Source: Selaginella moellendorffii | Taxonomy: Eukaryota > Plantae > Lycopodiophyta | Assembly: GCF_000143415.4 (NCBI RefSeq) | Contig: NW_003314283.1 | Location: forward strand, 196,752-260,751 | DNA: 64,000 bases | Direction of reading: 5' to 3' | Shown here: positions 1 through 48,714 of the stretch, in pieces | How the letters are laid out: each line of letters opens with the position of its first letter | Numbering within the stretch: position 1 is the first letter of the stretch | Position numbers and translations under genes: made by a program | The notes under the pieces: generated by a model | Seen by the model: the letters and a program-made list of their open reading frames with translations, nothing else | What the model was told of the DNA's origin: nothing | Database searches by the model: none

Positions 1-135
<135 letters not shown>

Positions 136-13675: not shown

Positions 13676-13893
13676 TGCCCTCCAAAACCCCGGGAAATCT
13701 CACAGCATAAACCCTACATTTTGCTCAAAAGCGTGGAACAAGATATTTTAGGGCCTAGGGTTTAAGCTTCTACATTGCTCTATTGATGTTTACAAGGTTC
13801 TAGATACTCAAAAATGTGCTTCCACTGGAGCGGGAATGATCCACTCAAACAAAGTGTGAGTTACCGCCAAGAAGGAACGCTACCTTTTGTGAA

Positions 13894-15972: not shown

Positions 15973-16136
15973 AGCGCATTCGCGAATGCCGGAAGAAATC
16001 CCAGCCCGGCCAGCTGCTGCGAAGCGTGCCCGCGCCGCGGAGCGCTCTCGTCACGAAGCGCCCTAACCCTAATCCTATGGAGTATATTCGTTCGCATCAA
16101 AGGGTTTAACGCCCAAGATTTAGGAGACACATGGCG

Positions 16137-17876
16137 TTATATTACTCGGAGAAGGCAATTTGTTAAATATGAGCCCTCTGGATATGCCAGATCAATCGGG
16201 TGGTCTGGTCCAGCTCCAGAAACACGAAGCAATGCGGCTTTTCTTCCAGCGGCTCTCGCAGCCTCCTGGAAACCAAAGAAGATTTTTCAAACTCTCTAGG
16301 CCTAGAACAAAATGAAGAGGAATGGATCACCTGGATGATCGATAAGAAGTTCTGGCTTTGTGCCACAGCGCCAGAGCACGAGCAAGTCATTAGCAATCCA
16401 CCAGGTTTGGTTAATTGCATCGCCATTGCGTTTAGGTTGCGGTATTTGATCGCAGCTTTCTCGAGAAACTGGAAAGAGAAGTAGTGAGCCTTCTGTCAGT
16501 GGCCAGAAAAGAAAATTTAAGAGAAACCTTGCGGCTCGGTGCCAGCTTTGGAGGATCAAGCACAACCACGTCCCAGGTTTCTCCTTTTGACAGCGCGGCT
16601 TTCATGTACTGAACAATGTCCGCCTTCTCAAACGTAATCACTTGTGGATCTATGTTGTTGAGAGAGATGTTTGCGTCCGCAAGGTCTATAGCAGACTTCG
16701 AGGAGTCAACGCCTGCACGGATGAAGATTATGAATCACGAAGGCAGACTACAAGACTATAAAGTTACCAATGACTCGAGAAGCTCCTGTGATGGCTGCGT
16801 TGAGCGCAAAGGCACCAGTGTAGCAGCAAAGATCCAAAATGGTTTTATCTTTGCAAAAGGACCTGAGTGCCAGCCGATTATCTCGCTGATCGACGTAAAA
16901 TCCAGTCTTTTGTCCCCCCAAAGAGACTTGATAAGCAATACCGTTTTCAAGCACCTGGCAGCACAAGCTCGTATCACTGAAAAATCCGTCACTAAATCCC
17001 TCAATAAACAAATGAATAAGAGAACTTACGTGAACTTCTTCGGGCCTTTCTTCTGATTCAATCACGCATTCGAAGCCTTCTTCCTTCAGCAGCTCCACAG
17101 ATGGCCTCCAAGTCAGAAGTTTCGTCCCGACTAATCTCTTGAGAGTTTCCTCTATGTTCGTCTTGTATTTTTCGACCCACGCAGCAGACGATGCCACAAC
17201 TATATGCTTGTCAAAGACATCCACCACAAGTCCCGAAAGCCTGGAATAAAAGAGCAGCTCAATACAAATGTAACAAAGAAACAAAGCTCGACACATACTT
17301 GCCTATCACCTTCACTGTTGACAAGCCGATAAACATTTGTTTCACTGGAAGGAAGGCCCAAAGCTTTTCGAAGCGCAAGAGCTCCAGACAATCTAGTCTC
17401 GATAAGCTTCTCAATATCAAAGTTGGAGTGTGGATCTCTGGAGAAAAGAAAGTAGCATACCATGAGAACAAATTCTTTCCTTCATAATTCTTTACCTTGC
17501 AGCTTCGTCTTGGGTTTGTAACACACGAACCCGAAACATAGAGACCGCATTGTAGACTCCCCAAGCGATAGGCTCTTCGGCGCCATTCGTGACAAGCACG
17601 AGATCCCCCGTCTTGGGAGGAGGCCGGCCGATAATCCGATCGATGGCGCCGCTAAACACCATGGGATTGCCAGTGACGAAGATCTGCGCCTTGCCCTTCT
17701 TCAAGACGACCCTAGAAACACCTGGCATTGCATCCATTGCGATCAAAATGCCGCGAAATATCACAATCCCGGGAGAAATCCTTACCGGGATTCAAAGACG
17801 CTACTTCCGCCAGGCGCTTGCTTCCAGCGGCGGAGCTTGCGGCCCATCGCGCCACCAGAGGCGCCAAACACGACAT
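16137..17876 (-). CDS. rlmI: RlmI/YccW-like SAM-dependent rRNA methyltransferase (PUA-like domain plus MTase), probably organelle-targeted
   Basis: [70 protein letters not shown] and AGPDHP..YLT; spliced first exon MSCLAPLV from 17876. Confidence 0.9.
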
Positions 17877-17972
17877 GAAAAACGAAAAACCCTAATCCTC
17901 CGTACAACGGCTTTAGATATTTGAAAATAGGGCTTATTTACCACAAAAGTTTTAGGTCGAACTACCAGAGCG

Positions 17973-20725: not shown

Positions 20726-20761
20726 ATTCTTTCAAAAACAAGCCAGTCCTGGTTCCACTCT

Positions 20762-22046
20762 CTACTGCAAAGTGATTACTAGACGAGAGGAACTCGCTTG
20801 CAGCCGCTTCAAGTCATTGTACATCTGGGGATGCCGGGCCTCGAACAGCTCCATCAGATTCCACTCCTCACTGTCCTGGAGGAGACGTGAGCAATTCACA
20901 GTCAGGACCTTGAGCCCGGGGCAATGGACGAGCAGAGCTTCCAGCAGCTCAAAGCATCCGTTCTCTTCGAGAAAAACCGTGGCCTTGACAAGCTTAAGTT
21001 TGGCCAAGACATCGCCATCAATCTCCTTACAGAAACACTGCACAAGGAAAGACAGTTTTACACTCAGAAGAAACCGAGCTTTTACGTACCTCGAGCATGT
21101 TGCCGCCGAAAGTGATGGTGTCCAGCCGCGAGAGGCCGTGAAAGAACGTTTTCCAAGCAACAGGCTCCGGGTCCGACACCGAGACATCGATCTTCACCTC
21201 GGAGATGTTGGGTACGAGCTCCACAATGCTGTGAATCTCCTTAAACTCCCACTCACTTCCTCCCATTGTCAGGATCTCAACGTTGTCGAGCGAAACCACG
21301 ATCAAGTCCTTGCAGCGCGACGGCAAGTGTAACTCCCGGAGCTCTGGAGCGACAAGAACACAGCTGATCCCGTCCAGCGTGAGGCACTTGAGGTTCATGG
21401 TTTCCAGCATGATGAACGGCGGCCCAGTCTCGGGACCCTCACGACGATCCACTGCCAAATGGACGCTGTTAACGTTGCTGTTCGTGAGCCTCACTTTAGC
21501 GGTCTGGAAGTTCTTGACGACCAGCTTGTCGAGAGCCGGGCAGTGATTTAGAACCGAGACCACGGCCGGGTGCTTGAAGCTGGAATCGTCGAGAACGCAT
21601 TCACGGAGGGTGGTGAGATCGAAGTTTAGCATCGGAAGGAGGAACGCTATCGATCCATGGACTCGCAGGGCCGAGAGTTTTGAGCAGTTCTTCACCAGGT
21701 TCCAGAGATTAAGCTCCTTTGTGCTCACATACCAGAGCTCCAAGTCCTGTATGGAGTCTTTAACGATTTCTATCCAGCTTGAGAGGAGTTCTTCCGGAAT
21801 GTCGCAGCCCTGGTGGATTTCTATGGCGAGATTCTTGATGGAGTGGGCGCGGCGGAGCATGGGAGCCACGGCATTGGCGTCGGATTGCTGGGCGAGCGTG
21901 AAGTGGAGGGAATCGACATACCTGGAGAGGGATTGCCAGCGGCGGCACACGGGCGCTAGGGTTGCGATGCTGCGCGCGTCCTTGAGATCGGCGAAGATGG
22001 AGAGGACGGCCTCTGCGGGGAGGGATTCGAAGCTCGCCTCCTCCAT
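20762..22046 (-). CDS. F-box/LRR (RNI-like) protein, two exons
   Basis: F-box FESLPAEAVLSIF..LAPVCRRWQ followed by LxxLxL repeats (CPALDKL, CPGLKVL); one short intron near 21030-21088. Confidence 0.88.
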
Positions 22047-22089
22047 TGCATTAGAGGCAGAGGAAACCTAAAACCTGGAAGAAATATCT

Positions 22090-22142: not shown

Positions 22143-23733
22143 TAACTACCTAGTGTGTGATTTAATCAGCATTGGGAACATTTAGTTCTTCCTTTTTTTT
22201 AATTTCTGTTTCGCGTGCCAATAGTCATGTACAAAGATGGCGAGACTTTGATGAGGTCCTTGCTGGCCGTCAAAGTTGCAGATATCCAAATCAACAATGC
22301 AGGAGGAAAATAACAAAAGGTGAAATCAAATTTAAACACAAATGATAAGCAAGAATATACCTTGATTACTAGGAGAATATTTTAGATATATTCCTTACCT
22401 ATAGGTTCTCAAATCTGAAATTGTAGCTTTTCTCTACTGGCAGGCTGCTGAAACTGGAATTCTACCAATGAGCTCATGGTCTAGCTAGCACTTGAGATCA
22501 ATACAAATTTTATAATATTTCTGGTACTTAAAAGTTGAGAATCTGCTCAAATTCCACAAGAATTCCATAAATTCCATATTCTACCATTGTCAATGGGAGG
22601 TCATTAGACATTCTGTTCATTGTTCCATATCATGGATAATTCTTTGTAGATTCAATGGTTCTCTCAAAATAAAACCCTAGGGACAACAGCTGTGCTGTGG
22701 CTCCTTATATGATAAGTAATTCTGAAATTGTGGATTGGATGTAGAAAGTCACCTTCAAACTTAACAATTAGAGAAAAATAATACCATCTCTACTGGAATT
22801 GCTTGAAATTGTTTTTTGTCCATGACTACAGATGGATCCCCATGTGAACAAAGTCCATTGAACAAAGCATGTCCTAATAGTGATTAGAAATTAGACACAA
22901 TTTGTTAGTGATATATAATAATTTTATTTAATAAAATGAAAAACAAATAATATAGATTTGTGAATGCATAGAATATAAAAAAGGAATATAGAAATGTGCA
23001 TATCAATTAGAAGTGAATGGTCCAAATTGAAACCAATTTAACGGTTATCAAAATCCCACTATATTAATATTAGTATATAGCATCATACTTATACACTTGA
23101 ACTTCATATCATCCCTTTCTCTTGGAACGATAGAAAATAATTAAGATTCTCTAGTGGACGGGTCAGAATCTAGAGGAATATCAGAAAAAGGTATTGGTGG
23201 ATTTGTAGATGGTGCAAATTAATCATGATCCCTTTATACAAAGCGTTTTAACACTTAAATATGCATAATTTTTAGAGGATCAACTTATTAGACATCATTC
23301 TAAACCTCATGAACTTGTGCTCCAACTTGCCATAACACCTACCTTCTATTGAGCAACAAGCCTCTTAAATAAACTATGTACTGTAAAATTAGGAAAACTA
23401 ATTAACACCAAGTCATCCACTTTGTATTGCACAAGAGGACAATGATAAGGAGTTGTAAAGCTATTATTGTCCCAAATGTTCAATAGACTTTGTTTGAACA
23501 AGCAGAAGAATGCTCATTAAATATTGATCTCAAAACTTAATATCAGCAATTTATGGTAATCATAAAGGTAAACTCAACTCTATTAACAATATTAGATCAT
23601 GGGTATATAGGACTTTATATAGTGAAACACCAATAGAACTCTATACCCTTATGATATATGCATACCAAAAAGATGATAAGTAACCATCCCAATTCGATTG
23701 TTGAAAATTTATATACTTTATGATCATCCCTTT

Positions 23734-24085
23734 TGTCGCGAATGTGACTTCGGGTATCGAAAGTTACCTGTCAGCCAATCCTTACAGACACTCTTACTTT
23801 ACTGCCACGATGGCAAGAGGTCGGTATTGCTGGACCTATTATCAGTTTCCCACTTGAGCTAGTTGAGAAACTAGTCAATGACCGTGTACTTAGATCGGAT
23901 AAACATAAGGTAGGAACCCTATGTGTTTTTTGCTGAGCATACTCGGCCTGGTTTGAGAAACTCTTATCATTGGCTTGCATTTGTTAGTATCAAAAACCCC
24001 CGTGATATTGAGATTGGTTCTGCTTCGTGGTGTTATCCTATAGTAAAGCACCATATGATAAAGGGTCAAAACCACATGCGCTACA
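23734..24085 (+). mobile_element. Solo LTR of family B with internal deletion
   Basis: Both termini present (TGTCGCGAATG...CATGCGCTACA), opposite in orientation to the B LTR at 24222; flanks CCTTT / CTTAG. Confidence 0.85.
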
Positions 24086-24430
24086 CTTAGATAATAGTTC
24101 TGTATTTATGGCTAAGGCATTTGATGTTTTAACATTCGAGAGGGATATGCTACACTTTCACGAGTACTTATCATGAATAAATAGATAGATTGGTGAAATG
24201 GTTTATTTGGACCTTCAAAGGTGTAGCGCACATGGTTTTGACCCTTTATCCTGTGGTGATTTACCATAGGATAACACCACGAAGCGGAACCTAAACCCTC
24301 TTTGTGCCACGTGACAGATGCCACATGTTTCATGCCACGTGTCCATAGGACAGTAGTGTGGAACCCGAGGTTTAGGGCCTTGGGCCACTGAACGAAGGAA
24401 CGGTGTCAAACTCCCAAGCATAGAGCCAAA

Positions 24431-27400
24431 TGTAAGCGACTAAATTTTCCATTCTACTTTAGTCACTTAACCACACCTCTGACCACTTGGAGGAGTCTCA
24501 TTCACAACCTCCATAAGTCCAATCCAGGACTTGGGACTTGCTAGCCCCGAGAATAGCATCCATGCCACTCAACATTTGCGCTTGGTCCAAGTGCTCCACG
24601 TGTCCGATCCCATGACCGACACTCAAAGGTACCACCGACATAGCAGCCCGTTACGCTAAGGCCATGCCCAATCACCTTTGCCACACTGGTAGTCCAATAC
24701 CACTTGCATCACCGTCTTGGCTCTCCAAGACTAGGCAAACCATCCGTGAGTGGTCATCTCAGATCCACTCCTTAGCATCCTTAGGATGCCCACCGACAAG
24801 GGGAATAGCCTTCCCCAATATCCCTCTGTCAGTCCCCACTAAGTCCCTTTCTGCCCCTGGCCGTGTTTGCCAACACTGCCACTGGATCGAGACCCACAGG
24901 CCCGACCACTAAGTCCCACGGTCCTCTGGGACTTCCTCACCACATGACTGTGTCCTTGGTCACTACCCCAGAGGACTGCTCCTCTTCCTTTCCACAGTCT
25001 GGGCCTTTGGGACAACATTTCGGAACACCGTGGCCTTACGCGAGCCACTTGGGTACTCTCCTCGCCTTCTGCCCTTGGGTGCTCTAGCCATGGGCTTAGA
25101 GCGGGTTCCGTTGAGCCACACCAGGTATCCAAGTAGGTAGTGCCACCCACACTTGGACTGGGAGCATCGGCCAGTCAATCTCCCGGGGGAACTAGAGCCG
25201 GCTCTTGAACACTTCACCAAGCTACCCCGCTTGTCGGTCCGTGTTCACTCTAGTCTTGGACTTCCCAGTGGGCAGCTCATCACCCAACACTGGGTCCGGC
25301 CTTCCTAGGCCAAACTGGCCTTTCCTGGCCAAATTGGCTCCACTGCAGTCCTCCCCCTACTATACTTTTGGAGCTCACCAAACCCCCCAGGGTCTGGGAG
25401 ACGAACGCTTTGGGCTTTCACCCTCTCAGGCTCCGGACTCGGACTCGGACTCGGACTCGGACTCGGATTCGGATTCGGACTTGGACTCGGGCTCGGCCTC
25501 GGTCTCGGCCTCGGCCTCGGTCTCGGTCTCGGTCCCGATCTCGGTCTTGGTCTCGGTCTCGGTCTCGGTCCCGGTCTCGGTCTCGACTTCAGACTCCATC
25601 TCGGACTCAATCTCGGACTCCATCTCGGACTCCATCTCGAACTCCATCTCGGGTCCATCTCGGGTCCATCTCGGACTCCATCTCGGACTCCATCTCGGAC
25701 TCCATCTCGGGTCCATCTCGGACTCCATCTCGGGTCCATCTCGGACTCCATCTCGGCGTCCATTTCGGGTCCATCTCGGACTCCATCTCGGGTCCATCTC
25801 GGCGTCCACTTCGGACTCCAACTCGGGTCCATCTTGGGTCCACCTCGGACTCCACTTCGGACTCCATCTCGGACTCCATCTCGGGTCCATCTCGGCGTCC
25901 ACTTCGGACTCCAACTCGGGTCCATCTTGGGTCCACCTCGGACTCCACTTCGGACTCCATCTCGGGTCCATCTCGGACTCCACTTCGGACTCCAACTCGG
26001 GTCCATCTCGGACTCCACTTCGGACTCCAACTCGGGTCCATCTCGGACTCCACTTCGGACTCCAACTCGAGTCCATCTCGGACACTCCCACGTGTCATGT
26101 GTTGGTCCTTTTGGGTCCCTTTTTGGAGCCTCGCCTTTTGCTCGCTTCGTGCTTGTTCCTCGAGCACTTCGTTGGGAGTTCCACTCCCGCTCTTGACTTT
26201 TCAAGTCGGGGCTTTTGGTCCAAACGTGTTACACTCATTTGGCTCTCGCTTCGGCCACTACCATGTGGCGCCCTTCCGGCTCCACTTTGGGGCCTAGGGA
26301 TTTTGTGTCTCACAACTCCACCACCCATAGACGAAGTTCGATGTCCTCATCGAACGGTGAACCATTTTATAAAGTAACACCTGCATGTGTTACCATTTCC
26401 ATCCTTGGCGCGTAGCCAATATTTGTCAATGGTGTGACATTGAAGGCTCACCATGCCTTCTCCATATTCGTCAATGGTTGGACATTGAAGGCTCACCATG
26501 CCTTTTGCATATCCTCTAAGGAGGGTAGTCTCTCCAACTTAGAGACTGATTGGACCACATATAATGGTTCTCTCCTTTTATTGGTTTAGTTCTCGCTAAA
26601 CCTCTTAGAGACCCTTCTCTAAGTCAATCCCACTACTCCTTCTCGAGTAGTCTCAATTTCCATCGATATAGCCTTTGCACTTTGGAACTTTGAATTTTGA
26701 CTTCTTGGAGTCAATTTCCTAGGTGTCTCCGACACCTTGCCTTGCACCTTTTGTGCAACTCCACTTCCCATCCTAGGAAGTTCTCTACTCGAGGGCACCA
26801 TCATCCTTTCTTCTATTTCGTGCCAAAGTTCTAATTATCATGCTTTGTGCTAGGGCTGTTCATGGCCCTATCATTTGGCTACCTTACCGCTCCCTCCCTT
26901 GGAGCTTCCACTTTCGCCAAATCGGAGCATTTCGGAATCCCTCCTTGGAAACACACTTCCTTTCCCGCAACTTGTTAGTGTCCAACACATTAGTGTTCCT
27001 CGCCTAACTTTGTCACTTGGATTCCTTCCAAGGGATTCCACGGCCCTATCTTGGCCACTCATCTTTTGCTTCTATCCGTTGATTGTTGCACCAAGCAACA
27101 TCGAATCTCTACCTCCCTCCTTGAGGTATTGTTTCGGTTCCATAGCAAAGACTCTTCTTTGCCAAGTCCGGAGGATGTTCACCCCTAGTACGTCTCTTTA
27201 GCATCTTCTGCTATGGGCTCTATCCACGGCCCAACTTCGTGACCCTCCCATGGGTCTTTTATAGAGACTACTTTCCTCGGACTCACTATGCCATCGCACG
27301 GACATAGTTTATTTCCCTTAGGTGCTCTTCCCACTTGGTCATCACGACCAAGCCACACCACCTTAAACAGTTCAATTTCAACATTTTGAACCAGGAACTT

Positions 27401-30400
27401 CATTCCTTAGCCAACCAAGGACCTTGTCCTTATCTGGCCATAAGATCGCATAGTGATCTCACCTTGGCACCTTAACAGAGTTGCCAAGAGGTACTTGGTC
27501 TTCTAGACCTCCAAGTTGTTGACTATAACCCCGGGGGCATCCCCCACACTTGGCGGTGCACCCAAGCCAGCCCTTACGGCCAAGGTTCATAGCAACTGAG
27601 ATTAGGTGTCCCCATCTCACTCACCACGACCTTGGTGCCACTTGCACTAAAGCATTCAAGTTAGATGTGCTGAGCTTTCACACTAAGCAATCTAACCGTG
27701 CATCACGACTCCGAGGCATCCCTCGCTTGGCGGTGTGCCCAAACCAGTCTCCCCACTGAGAGTCCATGACCACCGAAATATGAGTGTCCTCATATTCCAA
27801 ACCATCACCACGCCCTAGTGATTTGGGACTCGAACCCAAGCACTAGAGGGTCGGGACTCGAACCCAACCTCCGTATATGCATCTACGGACGGCATCACAC
27901 AAGATGCCTGGCGTGACTCCCCACGCCGGTGCACCAACTTATTTTTAAAGCGCGCTACAGATCACAGCTTAGGAACCTAGTTCCTCCACACTGCCAAGTC
28001 CTCTCACTTGACATGTCTGTGATCATGCATGGACTCTTCCATGCTCGGCCCCATGGCTCACCCTTTTTGAAGTTATCACCTTCAACTAGGGTATTTGTTC
28101 CCCCGACGTGCCAATCTCGCTTGGCAAGTCCTCTGACCACTGTAACATGGTTCCTGCATAAGTGTGAAGGTCCTTGACCATCGACTTTCGTTCAAAGCCC
28201 TCTCTTTGAACACTCGGGAACTACTTCCCTAACCTTGATAGCTTTGCCTCATGGCAAGCTTCAAGACCACGCTTCTGCTGCGCCACTCTGATTTCGTGCG
28301 TTCCATGAACCATTTACACTTGGCCTTTCTAGGTACTAAGCTACCTAGAATCGTCTTTGGGAACCTTGAAGGAACTCTGTCCCTCAGCTTGCTAAGGCCT
28401 CCCTTTTTTGCAAGCCTTCCAAATGCCACATAGTCTAACATGGACAATTCCATAACTTAGACTCTCCATGGCATCACGGTTGCTAGCGGCAACACCCTTG
28501 AGCCCCCACTTGATTCTCCACTCCCAGCTGGCATAACCAACCTTGGTTATGCCCTTTGATTCCTACGGTTCGGTTCTATCCCCTTACTTCTTGCTTTTTG
28601 GCTTCACACCTTTCCTTTGGTCATTCTCCTCCAGACCAGGAGGATAGCTTTGCACTTTCTATCATGCTTTAGCAAGTATTCTTAGGGATGAACCTACCCA
28701 ATAGCCTAGGGAGTGGTTCCTCAATCCGGGTATGCTCACCTTATAATCCCACACACTGGGATTACATTGTTGCTTATGGGCCTTTACATGCCCATCATTA
28801 GCCTTGCCAAAATTCCATTTTTGGCTTTGTCCAACTCGGGTAGACAGTCCTCTCCTGTCTCCGCAACCTTGGACATTTGGATAGCACCTTCTATCCATCA
28901 TTCGCTAGGGACTTAGTCCCTTGGGCTTTATCCATTGCCCTCGCGACATCAAACACCACCTTCTGGTGTTCTAGAGTGTTCGGGTGTCCCAATGATGGCT
29001 TTCTTGACAATGAGTATTTCCTTTTATGACATTGACTTACTATATCGCAACACAAGCAACTTATCCCCCGTAAGGGTATATCCAACTTCCCTATGCTATT
29101 AAGAAGTCTTGGGTAGCTACCTTCTACCCGTGTAACCAGTTATTTTGCACCTCTTGCTTAGTTGCCTCATAGTTGTCAAGTCCTACAACTCATTGCTGGT
29201 GCTTCCACACCTCCATCATTATCTGGGTCACCACACTCCAACTGCATGCTCTGCAGCTTAGGCTATGCTATTCCCATTTCCATTGGGATTCCTTTGGCAA
29301 GGGGTTCTCATGAACCCACCAACATAGCCTCAAGGTATCACACCTTGGCACATTTGGTGTTTCCACACCATCGGCTCCACGAGCCTACCTCTGTGACATT
29401 TCCCCTTCGTGTCTAAGTCTTTGCCAAGACCAACACCGCTCTTTCTCATGCCAACCATCCGTTAGCACTGCACCATAGAGGTCACACACAACTTTATGTC
29501 AAAGTTGTTTTCTTCTGGGAACACCTTTCCCATAACTTTAGCATGACACATTTTGCCATTGATGAGATACCCTCTGTTCTCATCTTTGGATCCTATGATC
29601 CCCCCCCATCCTTTGTGGGGTACAACACACCTTAGTCCAAATGCTTCCATCAGTCCTTTTAGGACCATCCGTTAACTCTACTTGAGTCATCCAGCAGTTT
29701 TGGACTTAGTTAATCCATAGACCCGTAAGGTCCTACTTGTGAGGCACTAGCTCACTGGAATACACTTCTTGCATTCCTGTCCTACTCAAAAGGACTATTT
29801 TCACAAGTGTTACTCCGACACTTGATTTTGTTCTCTGGGGGCAACCTTTGCCCCTTAGGACTACTTGTCCATGTGATGAGAACACCAACTCATCCACTTA
29901 ATACACCCCCAACTCCTGGGGTTGTTCCAGCATTTATTAGAGGTAGCCCCGGCTACCTTTTCAAGGACTTGAGTCCTCTTCCGTATTTGACCTCCCACAG
30001 TCATTACTTCTGGTCTCACATTCATGAGCACCAACCTCAACTATATGAGGAAAATCTTGTGACTCCTTTATTGCTTTGGAGTCTTTATCTTTCCCGTGAT
30101 CCCAACTGTAGTTGTTTACCACAACTACATTAGCCAGTTTGCTAAGTCAAACGCTCATCTAGATCACATCCTCAACTCTTTGAGGAAAACCATATACTGT
30201 TCCCAAGATCCCAAAGTCGTTCCATTATTGGCCCTTTTCTATCCACCACCTCGTCTACAAGTTCACACATGAACTGTAATGGAGAGCCATGTCTTCCCGA
30301 CTTGCTACTCCTCAAGGATAGACCCACTCCTCGGACCTTCCGATGCCAACACTAGTGGTGATATACTTGAGCACCAATAAAAGTCGGACTAAGGAACAGC

Positions 30401-31523
30401 TCCGATACCAAGTTGTAAGCGACTAAATTTTCCATTCTACTTTAGTCACTTAACCACACCTCTGACCACTTGGAGGAGTCTCATTCACAACCTCCATAAG
30501 TCCAATCCAGGACTTGGGACTTGCTAGCCCCGAGAATAGCATCCATGCCACTCAACATTTGCACTTGGTCCAAGTGCTCCACGTGTCCGATCCCATGACC
30601 GACACTCAAAGGTACCACCGACATAGCAGCCCGTTACGCTAAGGCCATGCCCAATCACCTTTGCCACACTGGTAGTCCAATACCACTTGCATCACCGTCT
30701 TGGCTCTCCAAGACTAGGCAAACCATCCGTGAGTGGTCATCTCAGATCCACTCCTTAGCATCCTTAGGATGCCCACCGACAAGGGGAATAGCCTTCCCCA
30801 ATATCCCTCTGTCAGTCCCCACTAAGTCCCTTTCTGCCCCTGGCCGTGTTTGCCAACACTGCCACTGGATCGAGACCCACAGGCCCGACCACTAAGTCCC
30901 ACGGTCCTCTGGGACTTCCTCACCACATGACTGTGTCCTTGGTCACTACCCCAGAGGACTGCTCCTCTTCCTTTCCACAGTCTGGGCCTTTGGGACAACA
31001 TTTCGGAACACCGTGGCCTTACGCGAGCCACTTGGGTACTCTCCTCGCCTTCTGCCCTTGGGTGCTCTAGCCATGGGCTTAGAGCGGGTTCCGTTGAGCC
31101 ACACCAGGTATCCAAGTAGGTAGTGCCACCCACACTTGGACTGGGAGCATCGGCCAGTCGATCTCCCGGGGGAACTAGAGCCGGCTCTTGAACACTTCAC
31201 CAAGCTACCCCGCTTGTCGGTCCGTGTTCACTCTAGTCTTGGACTTCCCAGTGGGCAGCTCATCACCCAACACTGGGTCTGGCCTTCCTGGGCCAAACTG
31301 GCCTTTCCTGGCCAAACTGGCTCCACTGCAGTCCTCCCCCTACTATACTTTTGGAGCTCACCAAACCCCCCAGGGTCTGGGAGACGAACGCTTTGGGCTT
31401 TCACCCTCTCAGGCTCCGGACTCGGACTCGGACTCGGACTCGGACTCGGACTCGGATTCGGACTCGGACTCGGGCTCGGGCTCGGTCTCGGCCTCGGCCT
31501 CGGTCTCGGTCTCGGTCCCGATC

Positions 31524-31571
<48 letters not shown>

Positions 31572-32246
31572 CCGGTCTCGGTCTCGACTTCGGACTCCAT
31601 CTCGGACTCAATCTCGGACTCCATCTCGGACTCCATCTCGAACTCCATCTCGGGTCCATCTCGGGTCCATCTCGGACTCCATCTCGGACTCCATCTCGGA
31701 CTCCATCTCGGGTCCATCTCGGACTCCATCTCGGACTCCATTTCGGGTCCATCTCGGGTCCACCTCGGACTCCATCTCGGACTCCATCTCGGACTCCATC
31801 TCGGGTCCATCTCGGACTCCACTTCGGACTCCAACTCGGGTCCATCTCGGGTCCACCTCGGACTCCACTTCGGACTCCATCTCGGACTCCATCTCGGGTC
31901 CATCTCGGACTCCACTTCGGACTCCAACTCGGGTCCATCTCGGACTCCACTTCGGACTCCAACTCGGGTCCATCTCGGACTCCACTTCGGACTCCAACTC
32001 GAGTCCATCTCGGACACTCCCACGTGTCATGTGTTGGTCCTTTTGGGTCCCTTTTTGGAGCCTCGCCTTTTGCTCGCTTCGTGCTTGTTCCTCGAGCACT
32101 TCGTTGGGAGTTCCACTCCCGCTCTTGACTTTTCAAGTCGGAGCTTTTGGTCCAAACGTGTTACACTCATTTGGCTCTCGCTTCGGCCACTACCATGTGG
32201 CGCCCTTCCGGCTCCACTTTGGGGCCTAGGGATTTTGTGTCTCACA
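24431..32246 (-). mobile_element. Young full-length non-autonomous LTR element, family A (LARD-like)
   Basis: LTRs 24431-26314 and 30414-32246 (TG...CA, nearly identical outside the satellite); TSD CCAAA on both sides; PBS TGGTATCGGAGC at 30399-30410; polypurine tract (PPT) at about 26315-26327; 4.1-kb interior with no long ORF. Confidence 0.95.
25432..26082. repeat. Composite satellite in LTR A: (CTCGGA)n, (CTCGGT)n, then 12-mer CTCGGACTCCAT and 11-mer CTCGGGTCCAT
   Basis: Directly visible; related arrays at about 31415-32014, 36830-37210, 42160-42806, 43345-43616 and 49975-50217. Confidence 0.95.
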
Positions 32247-32973
32247 CCAAAGAGTGATGGAACTGAACCACGGAGCAACTCCCGAGCATATAGCCCAAGG
32301 AGCGAAGGGACAGGAGCTTGGAGCGACTTGGAACAGTCCTGGAGCAACCAGCATCCCAATGCCAGGACTAGCACGCAAAATGGAGCCAAATGGAGTCTGG
32401 TGCTATTTCGGCATACCGGTGGTCTAACGCAAGGACATGGGTACTCTACCAACTAGCATGGAATGGAACTTGGGTTTAGACCCAAGCCGGACGTAGAACA
32501 AGGACAGGCACACAAGCGGACACTAGATGAACCCCATTGTGTTCAGGCCGATCTCTATATTTCGTAGATATGCCAAATGAGCTAATCTAGACACTTTCCA
32601 TATATAGCACTTAGGACCGAAATAAGATTAACACAAAGGGCATGATAGCAAGGGTGTTTGGCAGACACGGTAAGCTATCATTTAGCGAATATTGAGGGAC
32701 TAGTCTCAATATCACGGGGGTTCCCAACACTAGCAAGTGCAAGTCAATGAATGAGTTTCTCTAATCAGGTCAAGTATGCTTGACAAATAGCACGTAGGAA
32801 TTCCATCCTTATGCTCATTTGGTCAAGTGCACACGCGATGACCAGTTTCTTAACCAGCTTGAGTGGAGACCATAAAAGGGACTAGCAATACCGACCTCCT
32901 GCCATCATGGCAGTAAGGTAAGGTAAGAGTGTCTGTAAGGACTGGCCGATAGGTAACTTTCAATACAAATAGT

Positions 32974-33482
32974 TGGTATCGGAGTAAATGGCATGGGTTC
33001 AATTCCCATTGATTAGTGGCTACTTAAAATATAGTATACCCTTGAGCAAAGTATATTCCTACCCCTAAATTTGAAATCGTACGTATTGAGCATCCATGCG
33101 TACGTCCTTCCTCTTGTTTGGAGTATCCATGGACGAAGGTATCCACAATGGGACTATGGTACGGGTGGATGACTAGTTGCCTTATATGGAATAACTGGTC
33201 TACACAATGGAAGGATTGGTAGATTCAGTGAGGAAATGAAGGTGTTGTTTCCCCTTGGCTCAATAGGGGTTGTTAGTTAATAGTCAATGAAGACATTGAC
33301 ATCTCTGAAGGGGGGGTGAGTGTAGCGCATGTGATCATGGGATGAGATTTGGATATACTGTCACCATAGATCTTTGGAACCTTGGAGAATAAATGAGGAT
33401 AAAATAGCCACTAAGGGCTCTCTCATCAAACAATTGCCCCTTTTCTAGTTGGCTTAAGGGGAGAGAGATAAAGTGCGCTACA
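32974..33482 (+). mobile_element. TRIM (family C) lacking its 5' LTR
   Basis: PBS TGGTATCGGAG at 32974, about 340 bp non-coding interior, PPT GAAGGGGGGGTGAG, and a 162-bp LTR at 33321-33482 with terminal inverted repeat TGTAGCGCA/TGCGCTACA. Confidence 0.88.
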
Positions 33483-36400
33483 ATCGCCGATAAGGAAATG
33501 ACCAACGGAGTCAGCCACCCTTGCTACTCTGAGTGTCACCCAGCTTATAAAAGTGTGATACACCCTTACCCATAGGGACATAGAGAGAGAAGCTAAAGGC
33601 CCCAACCCTCCTGAGCAAAGAAACTAAACCCGTCAATAAGGTTTAGATAGACTACTGTAAATAGGCAGTTAGAGTTGTTTACACAGTCATGCCCTTTTAA
33701 CAGAATAAGGAACACCAACAAAGAGGCGGGTTATGTGACCAGTCGATAGTAGCTACCCCATGACTAGAGATTTCACCATGCACACGAAGTGCCGAAGCCA
33801 GTTTGCCTATACTGGCGCAAAGCCAAAGATCAATAGATGGACAATATCAAAGTCATAGACAATGATATCTTAGAGACGTAATTATCAGTGAATATATCTT
33901 AGTTTAGAACATAAAAGTATTCCAAGTAAGTTATCATCCGATAAACTAGTAGTATAGTATAGGAACCACCAAGATCATCATAATTGGTAGGCATAAGAAT
34001 CACCATCCAACAAAATTCAATAGCAAGGATATCATCAAGGAAACTCAATGATGAAACTTAACTACCAAAGATGGCAGATAGTATGCCAAACAACTTACCA
34101 AAGATAACTCAAAGAACACAAAGTATTATCAACTGGCAAACAAAATGCTCGCGAATGTATCACCCAAAGGAAATAACATTCCAATCTATTAAAACAAACC
34201 TGAGCAACAATCAACAGAACAAAATGAATGTGGTAAGACCAACAAACATAGCGTTCAGGCTAACTATTACACTAGCCAATCTGAATAGATCCCAGTCAAC
34301 AACACCAAGGAACTCAAGTTGCCTAAGCAAGTGTTAGCAATATCCTATCAATATTTCAAACCCAAAAGACCAATCCATAGCAAACCACAAAGTACATGTG
34401 GTATTGTGAAAAGCCAGAAGCCATCAAAGAGAATAACTAACTATCATGAAAGACTATCAATCATCCCATCAAGAAAGAGATGCATAATCATCGTTAAAGA
34501 AGGAATCCACTATCTCGAAGAATGGCAAATCATTCGATATCAACAATAATCAAGCAAATTCTTTTGACAAGGATAATCAATTATCTTAGATTATAGTCAA
34601 TCATCACTAATGATTGTTATATGCAAATAATAACTTCAACATTGAAACTAATAAGCCAAAATGCCTTCCCCAACAACTTCTAACAAATGTACCACAAGTA
34701 TGAAAGCTCAAGGAAGCAAAAACTCGAAAAAGCCTATAGCCAAGCCTTGCCTAACAATGATCACAAGTCGTGTATAAATCAATTTCAATGCTAAAGAAGA
34801 AATCATGGTGCAACCCACAATATCTTCCTCAACACATCCATAAGCCAAACTTCATAATGCAAAGCTAATGAAGAGTATGTCTGCATCAATCCAAAAGCCA
34901 AACATATTGAAACTACGCTCAACAAGTGATCACTAAATGATCCTCCATGAATCCATCTATAGCAAAACATAACTCACTTCATAACAAGCACAAAAAGAAT
35001 CATCAATGATCGATATATCCCAATTCAAATTTAACAAGGATTCAAAAATTCTAATATTGATCACTAACTCTTCTGCTTGTAGAGTTAGCATAGTCTATGA
35101 CTAAATCACTTTTCAAGGAAAAGCTCAAACCTCAACCCCTACTAAACAATCTCGTCTAAAACACAACTAGCTTCACTTGCCACTCAATTCATTTGAACGT
35201 CAATACAGTTGCCAACTAGCAAATGCACAAATGCTAAATAACATAAAGCAACAACTCAAGCATCAACACTATCTCTATCGAGACTAATGAAACTCGACAT
35301 CAATCTTTGAAGAGACATCTCATTTCACTCAAATCTCAACATTAACAATGTCAACGGCAAGACATCACTTCAATGCCATCAACACCATAACAAAGTTAAA
35401 AGAAAGTATGAGTGAATCACCACCCAAAACTTCCTAACAACTAAGCTAACCAAGGTCGAAGATACTTTACTTAGTATCTGAGACCAATTCTTCAGCAAAA
35501 CTTAGTTATAAATAACACTTCCTTAAGGAGTGAATCACCATATCTAAGACTCAATGAAATCCAACACTATGGACTAAATGTAACAAAATGATATCGACAA
35601 AGGAATCGATATGCCAACATGGAAAAGAAACCATGTAAGTTTAACCATACGATCCTTCCCAACACCATTCGGTAAAGCAAGCCTATCACTGCTAAATTAT
35701 CATCGAGTGAAGCAAGTGTCAACAGTCTTTCGACAAAGTTTACAAGCAATCACTAGTTGCAAAGCAACTAACAATCACTCTTTCAACTTGCCTTCATAAG
35801 ACCCAAACACTAAACTCATGCTATTGAGTTATATACTTGTCCAACATGAACTTAATACCTCAAGCATGAGATAAAAGTTTATGGACAAGCATAACTAAAT
35901 AACTACTTGAATCCAACTCAACTGCAATAAGCTCACTAATGCATTTAGCCACTAGCTCTGAGCATGCCTTGAAGACACTAGCTATACATGATTAACACTC
36001 AGTCGAAACTAAGGTGAAGACCATAAGATGGACTCATATTGGTACACAACCTCCTCATAGACAAAGCTATAGTATAGGTACCAACATCTCAACCTAAATA
36101 ACTAAGTTAGACATCACTATCCTCAACCAAAGCGTAGGGCTACCAAGACTAAATCAAGATCAGTGAGAGCTCACTACTATCATAGAATCTTAACGAAATG
36201 CAAGATGCAACCTATCACCAAACATAACGCTACAGAAGAAAGGTGTAAGGGTCACCCTTTTTAGAAAACTATAACAACCACTTTTCTACACCAACTTCAA
36301 ACTCTATCCAACTCAATTGCTTTTGCCCCAAAAATTAGCATCCCTTTTGGGTCGCATCATACAAACTATCTACTAAGCTCTAAGCTAACCAAAGTCAACT

Positions 36401-36608
36401 CTAACCCCTTTCACTAGTTTGTATTGGCTTACGAAAATGGAATGGTATTCGAGCAAAGTGACCGATAGATCAGCCATTGAAAAAGCCTAAGAAAATTTGT
36501 GAAAAAAAATAAAAAAAATTCCCATCCTAGAAAAAGAATGTCTCTCAGTCTAGGAATGCAAATTTTCAAGACTCAACCAACTTCTTCCTACTAACAACTT
36601 CACATAGG

Positions 36609-38205
36609 TGTGAGAAACAAAACTGAGTGGAGCCAGAAGGGTGCCACGTGGTAGTGGCTGAAGCAAAAGCCAAACAAGCGTAACACATTTGGACTAAAAG
36701 CTTTGACTTGAAAGGTCGAGAGCGGGAGTGGAACTCCCAACAAAGTGCTCAAGGAATGAGCACGAAGCGAGCAATAAACGAAGCTCTAAAAAGGGACCCA
36801 AAAAGGACCAACCCATGACACGTGGAAGTGTCCGAGATGGACCCGAGATGGAGTCCGAGATGGAGTCTGAGATGGACAGAGATGGAGTCCGAGATGGACA
36901 AAGATGGAGTCCGAGATGGATCCGAGATGGAGTCCGATATAGACCCGAGATGGAGTTCGAGATGGACCCAAGATGGAGTTTGAGATGGAGTCCGAGATGG
37001 AGTCTGAGATGGACCCGAGATGGAATCCAAGATGGAGTCCGAGGACCCGAGATGGAGTCCGAGGTCGAGACCGAGACCAAGACCGAGACCGAGACCAAGA
37101 TTGAGACAGAGACCGAGATCGGGATTGAGACCGAGACCAAGGCTGAGGCCGAGACCGAGCCCGAGTCTGAGTCTAAGTCCGAGTCCGAGTCCAAGTCCGA
37201 GTTTGAGTCTGGAAGGGTGAAAGCCCAAAGCGTTCGTCTCCCAGACCCTGGGGGGTTTGGTGAGCTCCAAAAGTATAGTAGGGGGAGGACTGCAATGGAG
37301 CCAGTTTGGCTAGGAAAGGCCAGTTTGGCCCAGAAAGGATGTACCCAGTGTTGGGTGATGAGCTGGCCACTGGGAAGTCCAAGACTAGAGTGAACACAGA
37401 CCGACAAGCGGGGTAGCTTGGTGAAGTGTTCAAGAGCTGGCTCTAGTTCCCCTGGGAGATCGACTGGCCGATGCTCCCAGTCCAAGTATGGGTGGCACTA
37501 CCTACTTGGATACTAGGTGTGGCTCAACGGAACCTCGCTCTAAACCCACGGCTAGAGCACCCAAAGAAAGAAGGTGGGGAGAGTACCCATGAGGCTCGCG
37601 TAAGGCCACGGTGTTCCGAAATGTTATCCCAAAGTCCCAGACGGTGAAAAGGAAGAGGAGCAATCCTCTAGTGCAATGACCAAGGATATAGTCACATGGT
37701 GAGGAGGTCCCAAAGGACAGTGGGACTTAGAGGTCGGGCCTGCAGGCCTTGATCCGATGGCAGTGTTAGCGAACATGGCCATAGACAGAAAGGGACTTGG
37801 TGGGGACCGGAAAAAAGAGGTTGGGGAAGGCTATTCCCCATTTGTGAGCATCCTAAGGATGCTAAGGAGTGGATCTAGGATGATCACTCATAGACGGAAG
37901 GCCTAGTCTTGGAGAGACGGGATTGCAATGCAGGTGGTGTTGGACCATTGATGTAACCAAGGTGAATGGGCATGGATTAGCGTAATGGGCTGGTATGTTG
38001 GTGGTACCTTAGGGTGTCAATCATGGGATTAGACACGTAGAGCACTCGGACCAAGCGCAAAGGTTGAGTGGCATGGATGCTATTCTTGGGGTTGGCAAGC
38101 CCCAAGTCTGGAGTTGGACTTATGGAGGTTGTGAATAAGACTCCTCCAAGTGGTTAGAGGTATGGTTAAGTGACTAAAGTAGAATGGAAAATTTAGTCTC
38201 TTACA
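36609..38205 (+). mobile_element. Solo LTR, family A
   Basis: TGTGAGA...CTTACA; TSD ATAGG; region D is continuous across it. Confidence 0.93.
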
Positions 38206-38583
38206 ATAGGTTCACCTCAACACAAATTCTCATGATCTAACAATATGCTTAAGCATCAAACATCTTTGCCCATATATCCAACATCTAACACCGATATCCG
38301 CAAAATGCAAAGTGAACATCTAAGGCTTAATCATGAAGACCATATCTTCGGACATCCACAATGCACTAACATTCTTCTTCAACAAACTTTAAGATCCAAT
38401 GTGAAGCCAAAACACTAACAAAAAAAATGACATGGAAAATCAAGTTCTAAGGAAAATTCCTCACTCGAACAATAATGCTACTTCCACTAACACAAGTGTT
38501 AGCGATATCAATATCTACACTACACACTTTCTCTATCCAATAACTTACTCCAAGTGTTAACAGATCAACTGATAAGCTATAGC

Positions 38584-38745
38584 TGTAGCGCACCTTATCT
38601 CTCTCCCCTTAAGCCAACTAGAAAAGGGGCAATTGCTTGATGAGAGAGCCCTTAGTGGCTATTTTATCCCCATTTATCCCCCAAGGTTCCAAGGATCCAC
38701 GGTGACAATATATCCAAATCTCATCCCATGATCACATGCGCTACA
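38584..38745 (-). mobile_element. Solo LTR, family C (162 bp)
   Basis: TGTAGCGCAC...TGCGCTACA; TSD ATAGC. Confidence 0.93.
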
Positions 38746-41700
38746 ATAGCAAATGAATGCTACAACCCCTTTCCAACACTTCACGGCAAACCCTCAAAAA
38801 AGCAATGTACCAACTTAAGTTTAGCATAATGGACCACCATTGAGAATCCAGTCAAAGCTACTTCTATGCTACTTCGTGTAAGTACACTAACTTCACTATC
38901 AACAACTTTGGGGTTGATCATTGTTTGTCCAAGCAACTTCGTAAAACACATTACTCATTATCACATGAATATGATATAAGAAATCATAATGACTTGATCA
39001 TCAATTGAGCAACACCATGAGCAACACCTATGTCATTACTTCAAAAGTTTATGTGATTATCAAGTGCCAACTCGATTCAACAAAATGCAACATAAATGCC
39101 ACACTCCATCAATAGAGATTTACAATACCCAACACCACTAACTTTTGTTCACAACACAGACAAGCTAAATGCCACACTCCACCAATAGAGATTTACAACA
39201 CTCAACACCACTAACTTTTGTTCACAACACAGACAAGCTAAATGCCACTCTCTATTTGACCAAACTCAACACTAATCCAACACCAAGCTACTCAAGGAGC
39301 AATAGCAAGGTTCTCGGAAAAGAATTGAGCATTGCAACCTAAGTCTTCCAATAGTAAGCCTAGACAAAATGGTTTAGCGTTTCACTGCTATCCACCCCAT
39401 AACTCACCATTTGTAAAACCATCATTTCCAACATGCATCAAGGTAGGGACTCTTGATTTCATGATGTGAACATGAGCAATAAGTTACACCTTGTTGCAAA
39501 TCGTCTCTTCAAGAAAAGAGAATGATTTACGTGTTTGATCCTTTGTCCCTGATAACTCTCTTTTCGGTCTCATCTTTCACTAAACCTCAAGCTTTCTTTT
39601 GCACTACTTTCAATCCAATTCAAGAAAAGTTTATGAGAGAGCACAACAATGACTACTTGAACCATTAGATTAATCCTTACAGTCTTGATTGATCCACTTA
39701 TAATCGTGCCTAGGAAGGATTCACTAGTGCCGTGCTAAAAAGCTACGAACCAACCTATTTGCCACTCATAGCAAACCTAGGGAAGGTTTACTTTCGCCTA
39801 CGGTACATGGAAAAACTAATGGAACCACCAATAGGCTAACATTAATCCTGCCTACTCAAAATGTAACCTTGAGTTGCTAATGTGCCTCACTCACGAGCCC
39901 AAGCTCAAACTCATGCAACCAGAACAATTTATTCCATCCTAAAAGCAAGCTCACATTATTATGGTACAAAAAGTTAACCCAAGTCCATACCCAAGGAACC
40001 AATGTGAAGCCTTTGCACCCAAACGTGTACGCACTCGGATCATCGTTTTCATCTCTGCATATGCAACAAGATTAGTTGCCCAATCTCATTGAATAGTACT
40101 CGCTGAGACTCATCCTCTGATACCAAATGTAGCGCACGTGGTTTTGACCCTTTATCCTATGGTGATTTACCATAGGATAACACCACAAAATGGAAACTAA
40201 ACCCTCTTTATGCCACGTGACACATGCCATGTTTCACATGCCACGTGTCCATATGACAGTGGTGTGGAACCTGAGGTTCAAAGCCTTCGGCCACTGAACA
40301 AAGGAACGGTGCTAAACTCCCAAGCATGGAGTCAAGGAGCATTGGCACTGGAGCACGGAACGACTCCTGAGCATATAGCCCAAGGAGCAAAGGGACAGAA
40401 GCTTGGAGCAACTTGGAACAGTCCTAGAGTAATCAACATCCCAATGCCAGAACTAGCATGCAACATAGAACCAACTAGCATGGAATGGAACTTGGGCTTA
40501 GACCCAAGCCGAACATAGAACAAGGATAAGCACGCAAACGGGAGTTAAACTATGCCTTAGGTTAGTCGGCCATGCCCAACCTACCCACTATCCCTACTAT
40601 ACATTTGGAACACCCCCCCCCCCCGCCCTTCCCCGCTTGAGGGACACACGCTTTGGGCTTTCACCCCAAACCTCCCTTAGTATCAGGAGTTAATCTCTGG
40701 GACAAGCTCGAAATTTACTAATTATGGAATGGCGCTAGACACGGGACAAACACCATTGTGTTCAGGACAATCTTTACATTCCGTAAATATGCCAAATGAG
40801 CAAATCTAAACACTTTCCATAAATAGCATTTGGGACCAAAATGAGACTAACACAAAAGGCATGATAGCAAGGGTGTTTGGCAGACACAGTAAGCTATCAT
40901 CTAGTGATATTGAGGGACTAAACTCAATATCATGGGGGTTCCCAACACTAGCAAGTGCAAGTCAACAACATGAGTTTCTCGTCACTGTGCCAAGTATGCT
41001 TGACTAAATGACAACATAGGATTTCCTTCTTTAGTGCCCTTCCGATTTAAGTGCACATGTGATGACCAGTTTCTCAACTAGCTTAGGCAGAGACTAATAA
41101 CGGGTCCAACAATATTGACTACCTGCCGTCATAGCAGTAAGGAAAGAATATCTGAAAGGACTAGCCGATAGGTAACTTTTGATACCCAAAGTCACATTGG
41201 CAACACTAAGAGAATCTGCTTTGAATAGAAATGTTGGAATACCATTCAATTGAGAAGGAAGTACCTAACAGTAGTTCCAAATGCACTAGCAAGAGCACTA
41301 ACTTCCTTTTCACAAATCAAGTAGTCAGAGGCAATAATGACATACTCATTATTACAAGTTAACCGTGGAAAAAGCCTTATTAGATCAAATGCCATCAACT
41401 CAAATTAACTCAAATTGCCCTTTTACAGCACGAGGGTGAGTATTATGAACACAATTACACACATATCGGATAATATCATATTTCATCTTCGGCCAATAAA
41501 AAGACCTATATAGCTTCTTTGTCACATGTTGATGTCTCATATGCCCGCCAAGATTAGAAGAGTTATGATCATGGAGAAACCTTGGAATAAATATTGAAAG
41601 TACCACCAGCTATAAATGATCATCAAGATCAATCCCAACAAAATAAAGAAAATTATCCTTCAGATGATCTTGAGAATGTAAAATGCAAAATGGCAAATCA

Positions 41701-47426: not shown

Positions 47427-48714
47427 ATCAGGCACACTCATACTCTTTTGCATTAAAACACCCCCAAGACTAATATCCGAAGCATCCATATGCAAAATAA
47501 AAGATTTAGTGTATTCAAAATGCACCAAAACTAAAGGAGTTGTCAATAAGTCTTTAAGATTCATAAATATATATTTGCAATCCTCATACCAAAATGAAAG
47601 ATGATATTGATGACTTTAACAATGTTTGCAATAATGCAATATGATAAAAAAGATGATCAATAAAACAACTAAAATACTGCACCTTACCCAAAAGCATTAT
47701 AATTTATACACTTCGGAATAGAAAAATTTTGAACGACTACAAATTTGTCAAGATCAACTTACAAACCTTTATGAGAAATATGGTACCTAAGATAAGTCAT
47801 ATCCTTGGACCCAAATATACACTTCAACTGCTTCAACTTTAGACTAACTTTCCACAACCAATTTAACACCTTCCAAACATCATGGAAATGCTCCTTTTAC
47901 ATCTTTTTTAAGTGGATCAAGACATTATCAATAAAGTCAACAATCACCTTTGACATACTGCAAAGAATTTAGTCCATCATCCACTAAAAAGTCATTACAA
48001 CATTGTTCAAATTATTTAGCATTACTAAGAACTTATATAAACAAAATTATGTATGAAAAGCAGTCTTGGGAACATCATTTTCGACCATCAGCACTTGCCA
48101 GTACCCAGAAGTAAAATCTAACTTGATAAACCAATAATTTTTCTTTAAAAATACAAAAGATTATCATTGTGAGGAATAAAATACACATCTTGTAACACAC
48201 GTGATTTTGACCCTTTATCCTATGGTGATTTACCATAGGATAACACCACGAAGTGGAACCTAAACCCTCTTTATGCCACGTGACACATACCACATGTCAT
48301 ATACCACGTGTCCAAAGGACAGTGGTGTGGAACCCGAGGTTCAGGGCCTTGGGCCACTAAACATAGGAACGGTGCCAAACTCCCAAGCATGGAGCCAATG
48401 AGTGATAGTACCCGACCATGGAGCAACTCCTGAGCTTACAGCCCGAGGAGCGAAAGGATAGGAGCCTGGAGCGACTTGGAACAGTCCTGGAGCAACTAGC
48501 ATCCCAATGCCAAGACCAACACGCAAAACAAAGCCAAATGGAGTTTGGCATTATTTCGGCATACCGGTGGCCTAACGCAAGGACATGGGTACTCCACCAG
48601 CTAGCATGGAATGGAACTTAAGCTTAGACCCAAGCCGAACGCAGAACAAAGACAAGCACGCAAGCGGGAGTTAGACTATGCCTCAAGTTGACCGCTATGC
48701 CTAGACTATGCCGT

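What the first reader, a model, noticed from the sequence alone, without database searches (positions are those of the whole stretch)
23729..24226. 136-bp inversion between head-to-head LTRs, shown by swapped TSDs and a rescued integrase
Seen: the B solo LTR has flanks CCTTT/CTTAG and the adjacent B element (24222-41205) has AAAGG/CTAAG. Neither pair matches, but the inner flanks are reverse complements of the other element's outer flank. Flipping 24086-24221 restores CCTTT/CCTTT and CTAAG/CTAAG. It also makes the host integrase read through: KQILLDNSSVFMAKAF..TSTYHE*IDRLVKWFIWTFKGMIIKYINFQQSNWDGYL (one frameshift). Inference: recombination between inverted LTRs flipped the spacer; the large deletion in the solo LTR may have stabilised the near-palindrome, and the spacer could be polymorphic in orientation.
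Basis: seen in the sequence. Interest (0 to 1): 0.75.

Follow-up and report, generated by a model that had tools for sequence, protein, structure and literature searches.

The report
Flipped 136-bp spacer between retrotransposon LTRs
In a plant retrotransposon cluster, 136 bases of an old, dead integrase gene lie flipped between two inverted copies of the same repeat; this is a clean small example of the known way inverted repeats turn DNA around by recombination.

Summary
A truncated solo LTR (23734-24085, + sense) and a 17-kb element of the same family (24222-41205, minus sense) face each other across 136 bp. Their 5-bp flanks are CCTTT/CTTAG and AAAGG/CTAAG, so each inner flank is the reverse complement of the other element's outer flank. 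Both flanks outside the pair encode a degenerate Ty3-type integrase on the minus strand. The spacer encodes the missing 45 residues on the plus strand.

In 34 of 35 reference polyproteins the residue gap between the flank matches equals the spacer's length. A profile places the spacer pieces at positions 151-179, between 85-123 and 195-219. A frameshift-tolerant score is 19.8 bits for the plus strand against 13.0 for the minus strand (null 13.3 ± 2.0).

Four neighbouring insertions have perfect direct duplications, and the present arms are only 74 bp at 86.5% identity. An assembly artefact is therefore unlikely.

The best explanation is inversion by recombination between the two inverted LTRs. 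That is the mechanism, and the diagnostic (exchanged duplications), already described for Galileo in Drosophila. Chimerism of the LTRs could not be shown. The LTRs are tail-to-tail (U5 ends facing), not head-to-head. Present-day orientation polymorphism is unlikely. This is an ordinary, well-documented instance of a known process.

The parts
23596..23733 (-). Host Ty3-type integrase, part downstream of the spacer (profile positions 195-245); includes one copy of duplication 1 (CCTTT, 23729-23733)
   Evidence: tblastn hits from 51 polyproteins; own profile score 10.1 bits at positions 195-219
23734..24085 (+). Solo LTR of family B, TG..CA ends, about 730 bp deleted internally (junction near 24016-24022 with GGTYC microhomology); U5 end faces the spacer
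24086..24221 (+). Inverted 136-bp spacer: host integrase core (profile 151-179 and onward) now on the plus strand; begins CTTAG (reverse complement of duplication 2) and ends AAAGG (reverse complement of duplication 1)
24222..24430 (-). U5-terminal 209 bp of the 3' LTR of element B1
24431..32246 (-).
32247..32970 (-). Rest of the 3' LTR of B1 (about the first 20 bp of U3 missing, replaced by a 510-bp foreign block at 32973-33482)
32973..40127 (-). B1 internal region without long reading frames, carrying a nested inverted solo LTR of the young family (36626-38206) and a 165-bp TG..CA unit (38584-38748)
40128..41205 (-). 5' LTR of B1, followed on the minus strand by the primer binding site TGGTATCAGAGG
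41206..41609 (-). Host Ty3-type integrase upstream of the spacer: zinc-binding domain 41403-41609 and core N-part 41210-41404; includes one copy of duplication 2 (CTAAG, 41206-41210)
   Evidence: (Integrase_H2C2 E 1.3e-9, 38.4 bits, cut-off 25.5)
47448..48148 (-). Reverse transcriptase / RNase H remnants of the same host element, upstream on the minus strand

Best explanation
An old Ty3-type retrotransposon on the minus strand received two independent insertions of the non-coding LTR family B. The insertion sites lay 126 bp apart in its integrase core, the two elements were in opposite orientation, and their U5 ends pointed at each other. Each insertion made its own 5-bp duplication (CCTTT and CTAAG on the plus strand).

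Homologous recombination then took place between the two spacer-proximal LTRs. This could have been an intrachromatid crossover or an equivalent repeat-guided repair or template-switch event. It inverted everything between the crossover points. The LTRs kept their orientation and length, while the spacer and its two inner duplication copies were flipped. The left element was reduced to a solo LTR by LTR-LTR recombination. Separately, it lost about 730 bp by illegitimate recombination at a GGTYC microhomology. A young element later landed in the right-hand LTR.

Shown: the exchanged duplications, the opposite orientation, and the strand switch and collinearity of the host gene. Inferred: the crossover itself and the order of events.
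For: Exchanged 5-bp duplications at exact LTR ends. LTR ends fixed by alignment of five copies. Sense orientation comes from the primer binding site after the 5' LTR.

The host zinc-binding domain lies on the minus strand. 35 reference polyproteins match both flanks on the minus strand, and in 34 of them the residues missing between the matches (median 46) equal what the spacer holds (45.3). A profile of 98 integrases maps the pieces in this order: 8-59 and 85-123 (right flank, minus); 151-164 and 169-179 (spacer, plus); 195-219, 226-245 and 291-316 (left flank, minus). The frameshift-tolerant profile score is 19.8 for the spacer plus strand and 13.0 for the minus strand. The null is 13.3 ± 2.0, and 0.5% of 800 shuffles reach the observed value.

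Both LTRs have a normal column order with no duplicated segment, so the breakpoints were at equivalent positions. The U3 half of the B1 3' LTR pairs with the B1 5' LTR (45 shared sites against 21 and 19). This rules out the variant in which the whole 3' LTR came from the left element.

Four neighbouring insertions have perfect direct duplications. The mechanism and the diagnostic are established: PMC2775673 and PMC8232201.
Against: Chimerism of the two LTRs, the third classical criterion, was not demonstrated. The copies are 12-25% diverged. The solo LTR keeps only 74 bp on the spacer side. The only signal is marginal: Fisher p = 0.046 in one of three comparisons, uncorrected. No uninverted allele or orthologue was seen. 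No reads were available to confirm the assembly.
Confidence: 0.82

Rival explanations
1. Assembly artefact: the spacer was placed in the wrong orientation between inverted repeats by the assembler.
For: Inverted repeats are a known source of orientation errors, and no read data could be inspected.
Against: The arms next to the spacer are only 74 bp at 86.5% identity. The left LTR also lacks 730 bp that the right one has, so the two junctions are unique sequence for any read or k-mer of ordinary length. Four nearby nested insertions have base-perfect duplications.
Confidence: 0.05
2. Inversion between the distal (left) LTR of a then-complete left element and the proximal LTR of B1. This carried the left element's body to the right of the spacer and left a solo-like LTR behind. 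LTR-LTR deletion in the resulting three-LTR composite followed.
For: It needs the same number of events as the main model, gives the same exchanged duplications, and explains the solo LTR without a separate step (reasoning).
Against: It predicts that the U3 part of the LTR at 32247-32970 is the sister of the solo LTR's U3 part. Instead those two are 74.5% identical, the solo LTR is 85% identical to another copy (45250-46390), and the 32247-32970 LTR pairs with B1's own 5' LTR. No third LTR or second internal region remains.
Confidence: 0.07
3. Two double-strand breaks inside the LTRs were rejoined without homology (end joining), or an aberrant integrase reaction on chromosomal LTR ends flipped the fragment.
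For: Microhomology-mediated events do occur in this locus, as shown by the 730-bp deletion junction. Aberrant transposition makes inversions for cut-and-paste elements (PMC2775673).
Against: End joining at non-equivalent positions would leave one LTR with a duplicated and the other with a missing segment of matching extent. The right LTR has a normal column order. LTR retrotransposon integrase acts on cDNA ends, not on chromosomal copies (established knowledge).
Confidence: 0.04

Closest known systems
Inversions made by ectopic recombination between oppositely oriented transposon copies, e.g. Galileo inversion 2z3 in Drosophila buzzatii (PMC2775673)
   Same: Two copies of one family in opposite orientation flank the inverted segment, and their target site duplications are exchanged, each being the reverse complement of the other copy's. 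Secondary insertions with intact duplications sit in the breakpoint copies.
   Different: Here the repeats are LTRs of a plant retrotransposon and the inverted segment is 136 bp rather than megabases. Chimerism of the copies could not be shown, and no uninverted chromosome is available. The ancestral order is read from a host reading frame instead.
Inter-element LTR recombination in plant genomes: solo LTRs and complete elements with mismatched duplications (e.g. chimeric centromeric retrotransposons of maize CEN10, PMC4806543)
   Same: Mismatched 5-bp duplications serve as the mark of recombination between different copies. Solo LTRs and microhomology deletions occur in the same neighbourhood.
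   Different: Those cases involve copies in the same orientation and delete the DNA between them. Here the copies are inverted, so the DNA between them is kept and flipped.
Flip-flop of a segment between closely spaced inverted repeats (general inverted-repeat recombination; review PMC8232201)
   Same: The geometry is the same: inverted arms, a short spacer, and a reversal of the spacer only.
   Different: There is no evidence of ongoing switching. The arms have since decayed and one is largely deleted.

Membership tests
Inversion by ectopic recombination between inverted transposon copies (criteria of PMC2775673) | Two homologous copies in opposite orientation at the two ends of the inverted segment | tested here: met
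   Solo LTR on the plus strand and B1 3' LTR on the minus strand share the same termini and are 86.5% identical over the shared 74 bp
Inversion by ectopic recombination between inverted transposon copies (criteria of PMC2775673) | Exchanged target site duplications | tested here: met
   CCTTT/CTTAG and AAAGG/CTAAG; each inner flank is the reverse complement of the other copy's outer flank
Inversion by ectopic recombination between inverted transposon copies (criteria of PMC2775673) | Both copies chimeric (switch of ancestry at the crossover point) | tested here: inconclusive
   Sliding identity and informative-site counts give p = 0.046 in one of three comparisons. The solo LTR retains only 74 bp on the spacer side
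Inversion by ectopic recombination between inverted transposon copies (criteria of PMC2775673) | Ancestral, uninverted order known | tested here: met
   No uninverted chromosome was available. The host integrase serves as the internal standard: profile order 8-123 (minus), 151-179 (plus), 195-316 (minus), and a residue gap equal to spacer length in 34 of 35 references
Solo LTR | TG..CA termini, homology to LTRs of complete elements, no internal region, direct 5-bp duplication | tested here: met
   Termini and homology. The duplication is direct only after the spacer is read in reverse
LTR retrotransposon (element 24222-41205) | Two LTRs in direct orientation, primer binding site after the 5' LTR, polypurine tract before the 3' LTR, 5-bp duplication | tested here: inconclusive
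   LTR pair and primer binding site TGGTATCAGAGG are present. The polypurine tract region is replaced by a foreign 510-bp block. The duplication is exchanged. No coding capacity was found
Ty3-type (Metaviridae) integrase (host gene) | Zinc-binding H2C2 domain followed by the catalytic core, downstream of reverse transcriptase and RNase H | tested here: met
   Integrase_H2C2 scores 38.4 bits against a cut-off of 25.5. Reverse transcriptase and RNase H matches lie upstream on the same strand. Core pieces are too short for Pfam but map in order on the own profile

The most novel reading that the evidence does not exclude
The convergent LTR ends with their 136-base loop could be transcribed by read-through into a hairpin RNA (the stem is about 70 bp; DNA fold z = -12.7). 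Such an RNA would feed small-RNA silencing of family B, in the manner of natural inverted transposon duplications that silence their family. Alternatively, the spacer may still switch orientation in some lineages.
Probability: 0.04. Interest if true: 0.5.

Novelty: new member of a known kind. Interest (0 to 1): 0.22.

Why it matters
It is a tidy, base-resolved example of repeat-mediated inversion at the smallest scale. The ancestral order can be read from a broken reading frame, with no second genome needed. It shows that exchanged duplications can be used to detect micro-inversions inside nested retrotransposon clusters, where annotation pipelines would simply report elements 'without duplications'. 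It changes nothing in principle: the mechanism and the diagnostic are textbook.

Tried and rejected
Pfam scans of the short integrase pieces gave nothing except the zinc-binding domain.

The exhaustive representative search with the 69-residue zinc-finger piece gave 13 hits. None was close enough to match the core pieces. A word-based search with one of those hits supplied 132 polyproteins, which did match both flanks.

tblastn did not hit the spacer itself, because of its frameshift, stop and short length. A profile search per piece and a frameshift-tolerant profile alignment were used instead.

Chimerism of the LTRs was tested by regional identity matrices, sliding windows and informative-site counts. 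The result was inconclusive.

Self-comparison found no other copy of the host element in the window. Earlier scan notes held nothing on this locus.

The pieces were searched apart, so the joined step is left out.

Full report
**Setting**

The window is plant DNA. Bases 4-22 kb carry ordinary genes: PMR5/PC-esterase, DnaJ, a DHU1-like WD40 protein and an F-box-LRR protein. From 22 kb onward it is a cluster of nested LTR retrotransposons.

**The observation**

Direct reading shows a 352-bp LTR at 23734-24085, reading TGTCGCG...GCGCTACA, with flanks CCTTT and CTTAG. A 17-kb element lies at 24222-41205, reading TGTAGCGC...GGCAACA, with flanks AAAGG and CTAAG.

Alignment with four further copies of the family fixes the LTR ends to the base. 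The same alignment shows that the short LTR lacks about 730 bp internally. The deletion junction lies near 24016-24022 in a GGTYC microhomology.

The reverse complement of the 136-bp spacer starts CCTTT and ends CTAAG. Flipping the spacer therefore gives each element a direct 5-bp duplication. The chance of this at fixed positions is about 1e-6.

**Orientation**

The LTR at 40128-41205, read on the minus strand, is followed by TGGTATCAGAGG. This is the usual initiator-methionine tRNA primer binding site (established knowledge). The large element (B1) is therefore minus-sense, and its 3' LTR lies next to the spacer. The solo LTR is plus-sense. The two U5 ends face each other, so the pair is tail-to-tail, not head-to-head.

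The B1 3' LTR is split into 24222-24430 and 32247-32970 by a young nested element at 24431-32246. That element has near-identical LTRs and a perfect duplication CCAAA.

**The host gene**

The right flank on the minus strand holds an Integrase_H2C2 domain (41403-41609; E 1.3e-9, 38.4 bits against a cut-off of 25.5). Reverse transcriptase and RNase H remnants of the same element lie further upstream on the same strand, at 47448-48148. The host is thus a degenerate Ty3-type element on the minus strand.

Translations:
- Right flank, minus strand: ...FYSKQILL
- Spacer, plus strand: LDNSSVFMAKAF... and, in a second frame, ...TSTYHE*IDRLVKWFIWTFK
- Left flank, minus strand: KGMIIKYINFQQSNWDGYL...

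The duplicated bases keep the same codon phase on both sides of both junctions.

The pieces are too short for Pfam, so reference proteins were fetched. This gave 132 Ty3-type polyproteins, many from plants. Three tests followed.

1. tblastn matched the right flank (41404-41210, minus) and the left flank (23733-23596, minus). Of 35 proteins that match both, 34 lack 44-46 residues between the two matches. The 126 unique spacer bases plus the flank remainders hold 45.3 residues.
2. A profile built from 98 of the integrases (319 positions) maps the stop-free pieces in this order: 8-59 and 85-123 (right, minus); 151-164 and 169-179 (spacer, plus); 195-219, 226-245 and 291-316 (left, minus).
3. A frameshift-tolerant alignment of the profile to the spacer DNA scores 19.8 bits on the plus strand, at positions 151-179. 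It scores 13.0 on the minus strand, at an unrelated place. Shuffled spacers give 13.3 ± 2.0, and 0.5% of 800 reach the observed score. The figure is 0.25% when the profile is limited to the expected gap.

The spacer therefore holds the missing stretch of the host integrase, on the wrong strand. No flipped or joined integrase sequence was built; the pieces were searched apart.

**Mechanism**

Two distinct duplications mean two integration events. The flip moved the inner copy of each duplication together with the spacer, so the breakpoints lie inside the elements.

Both LTRs keep a normal column order, with no duplicated or reciprocally missing block. The breakpoints were therefore at equivalent positions. 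That is the signature of homologous recombination between inverted repeats. The review PMC8232201 states this outcome in general terms. The Galileo study PMC2775673 sets out three criteria: opposite orientation, exchanged duplications and chimeric copies. The first two are met here.

The third was tested and is inconclusive. The family's LTRs are 12-25% diverged from one another, and the solo LTR keeps only 74 bp on the spacer side. The B1 3' LTR is clearly closest to its own 5' LTR in the U3 half (45 shared informative sites against 21 and 19). It loses that preference in the U5 half, as a crossover would predict, but only at p = 0.046 in one of three comparisons.

The same data argue against a variant in which the distal LTR of the left element recombined and its body moved across. 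The solo LTR's U3 part is 85% identical to another copy (45250-46390) and only 74.5% identical to the B1 3' LTR.

**Artefact?**

The arms now flanking the spacer are 74 bp at 86.5% identity, and the left LTR lacks 730 bp present in the right. Both junctions are therefore unique sequence. Four neighbouring nested insertions have base-perfect direct duplications: CCAAA, GTGAT, ATCAG and AAAAG. Mis-orientation by an assembler is unlikely, but it cannot be excluded without reads.

The region still folds as a 70-bp stem with a 136-base loop (z = -12.7). That the deletion 'stabilised' a long quasi-palindrome is reasonable, since long inverted repeats are known to be fragile (established knowledge). 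It is untested here. Present-day flipping is improbable given the decayed arms.

**Comparison and verdict**

This is a new instance of a known process. It is notable only for its small size and because the ancestral order can be read from a broken reading frame. Interest is low to moderate.

Noticed in passing
window 38584-38748; 32973-33482; 55496-56006; 60479-60643: A 165-bp TG..CA unit has the duplication ATAGC, and both its termini resemble the U5 end of the B LTR (TGTAGCGCA...TGCGCTACA). The same unit ends a 510-bp block that starts with a PBS-like TTGGTATCGGAG and a tRNA B-box-like GGTTCAATTCC. The block sits between a B internal region and the U3 start of a B LTR at two loci, in opposite orientations. 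It may be a miniature LTR element or a second small inversion.
   Followed up: partly
It has the duplication CCAAA. The long open frames inside the arrays are repeat artefacts.
   Followed up: partly
window 41949-44915; 45165-47426; 45250-46390: Three solo LTRs have perfect duplications. One belongs to the young family (GTGAT). One is a B LTR (ATCAG). The third is another B solo LTR nested in reverse inside that B LTR (AAAAG).
   Followed up: yes
window 23596-48190, minus strand: About 2.6 kb of surviving host Ty3-type pol sequence carries at least five insertions of family B, plus others. This is a striking local pile-up of one family.
   Followed up: no
window 48191-60710: Two B internal regions (50722-54400 and 56018-60488) lie in series, separated by one LTR (54401-55495), with truncated LTR ends at 50450-50526 and 60644-60710. 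This is a tandem, LTR-sharing arrangement of the kind made by unequal recombination.
   Followed up: no
window 4000-22050: A gene-dense stretch directly abuts the repeat cluster: PMR5/PC-esterase (9532-11278), DnaJ (13017-13508, minus), a DHU1-like WD40 protein (18573-20395) and an F-box-LRR protein (21027-22046, minus).
   Followed up: partly
window 1-140 and 2709-3122: A 6-bp-period tandem array lies at the very start of the window, and a 194-bp direct repeat pair (90% identity) lies at 2709-2901 and 2929-3122.
   Followed up: no
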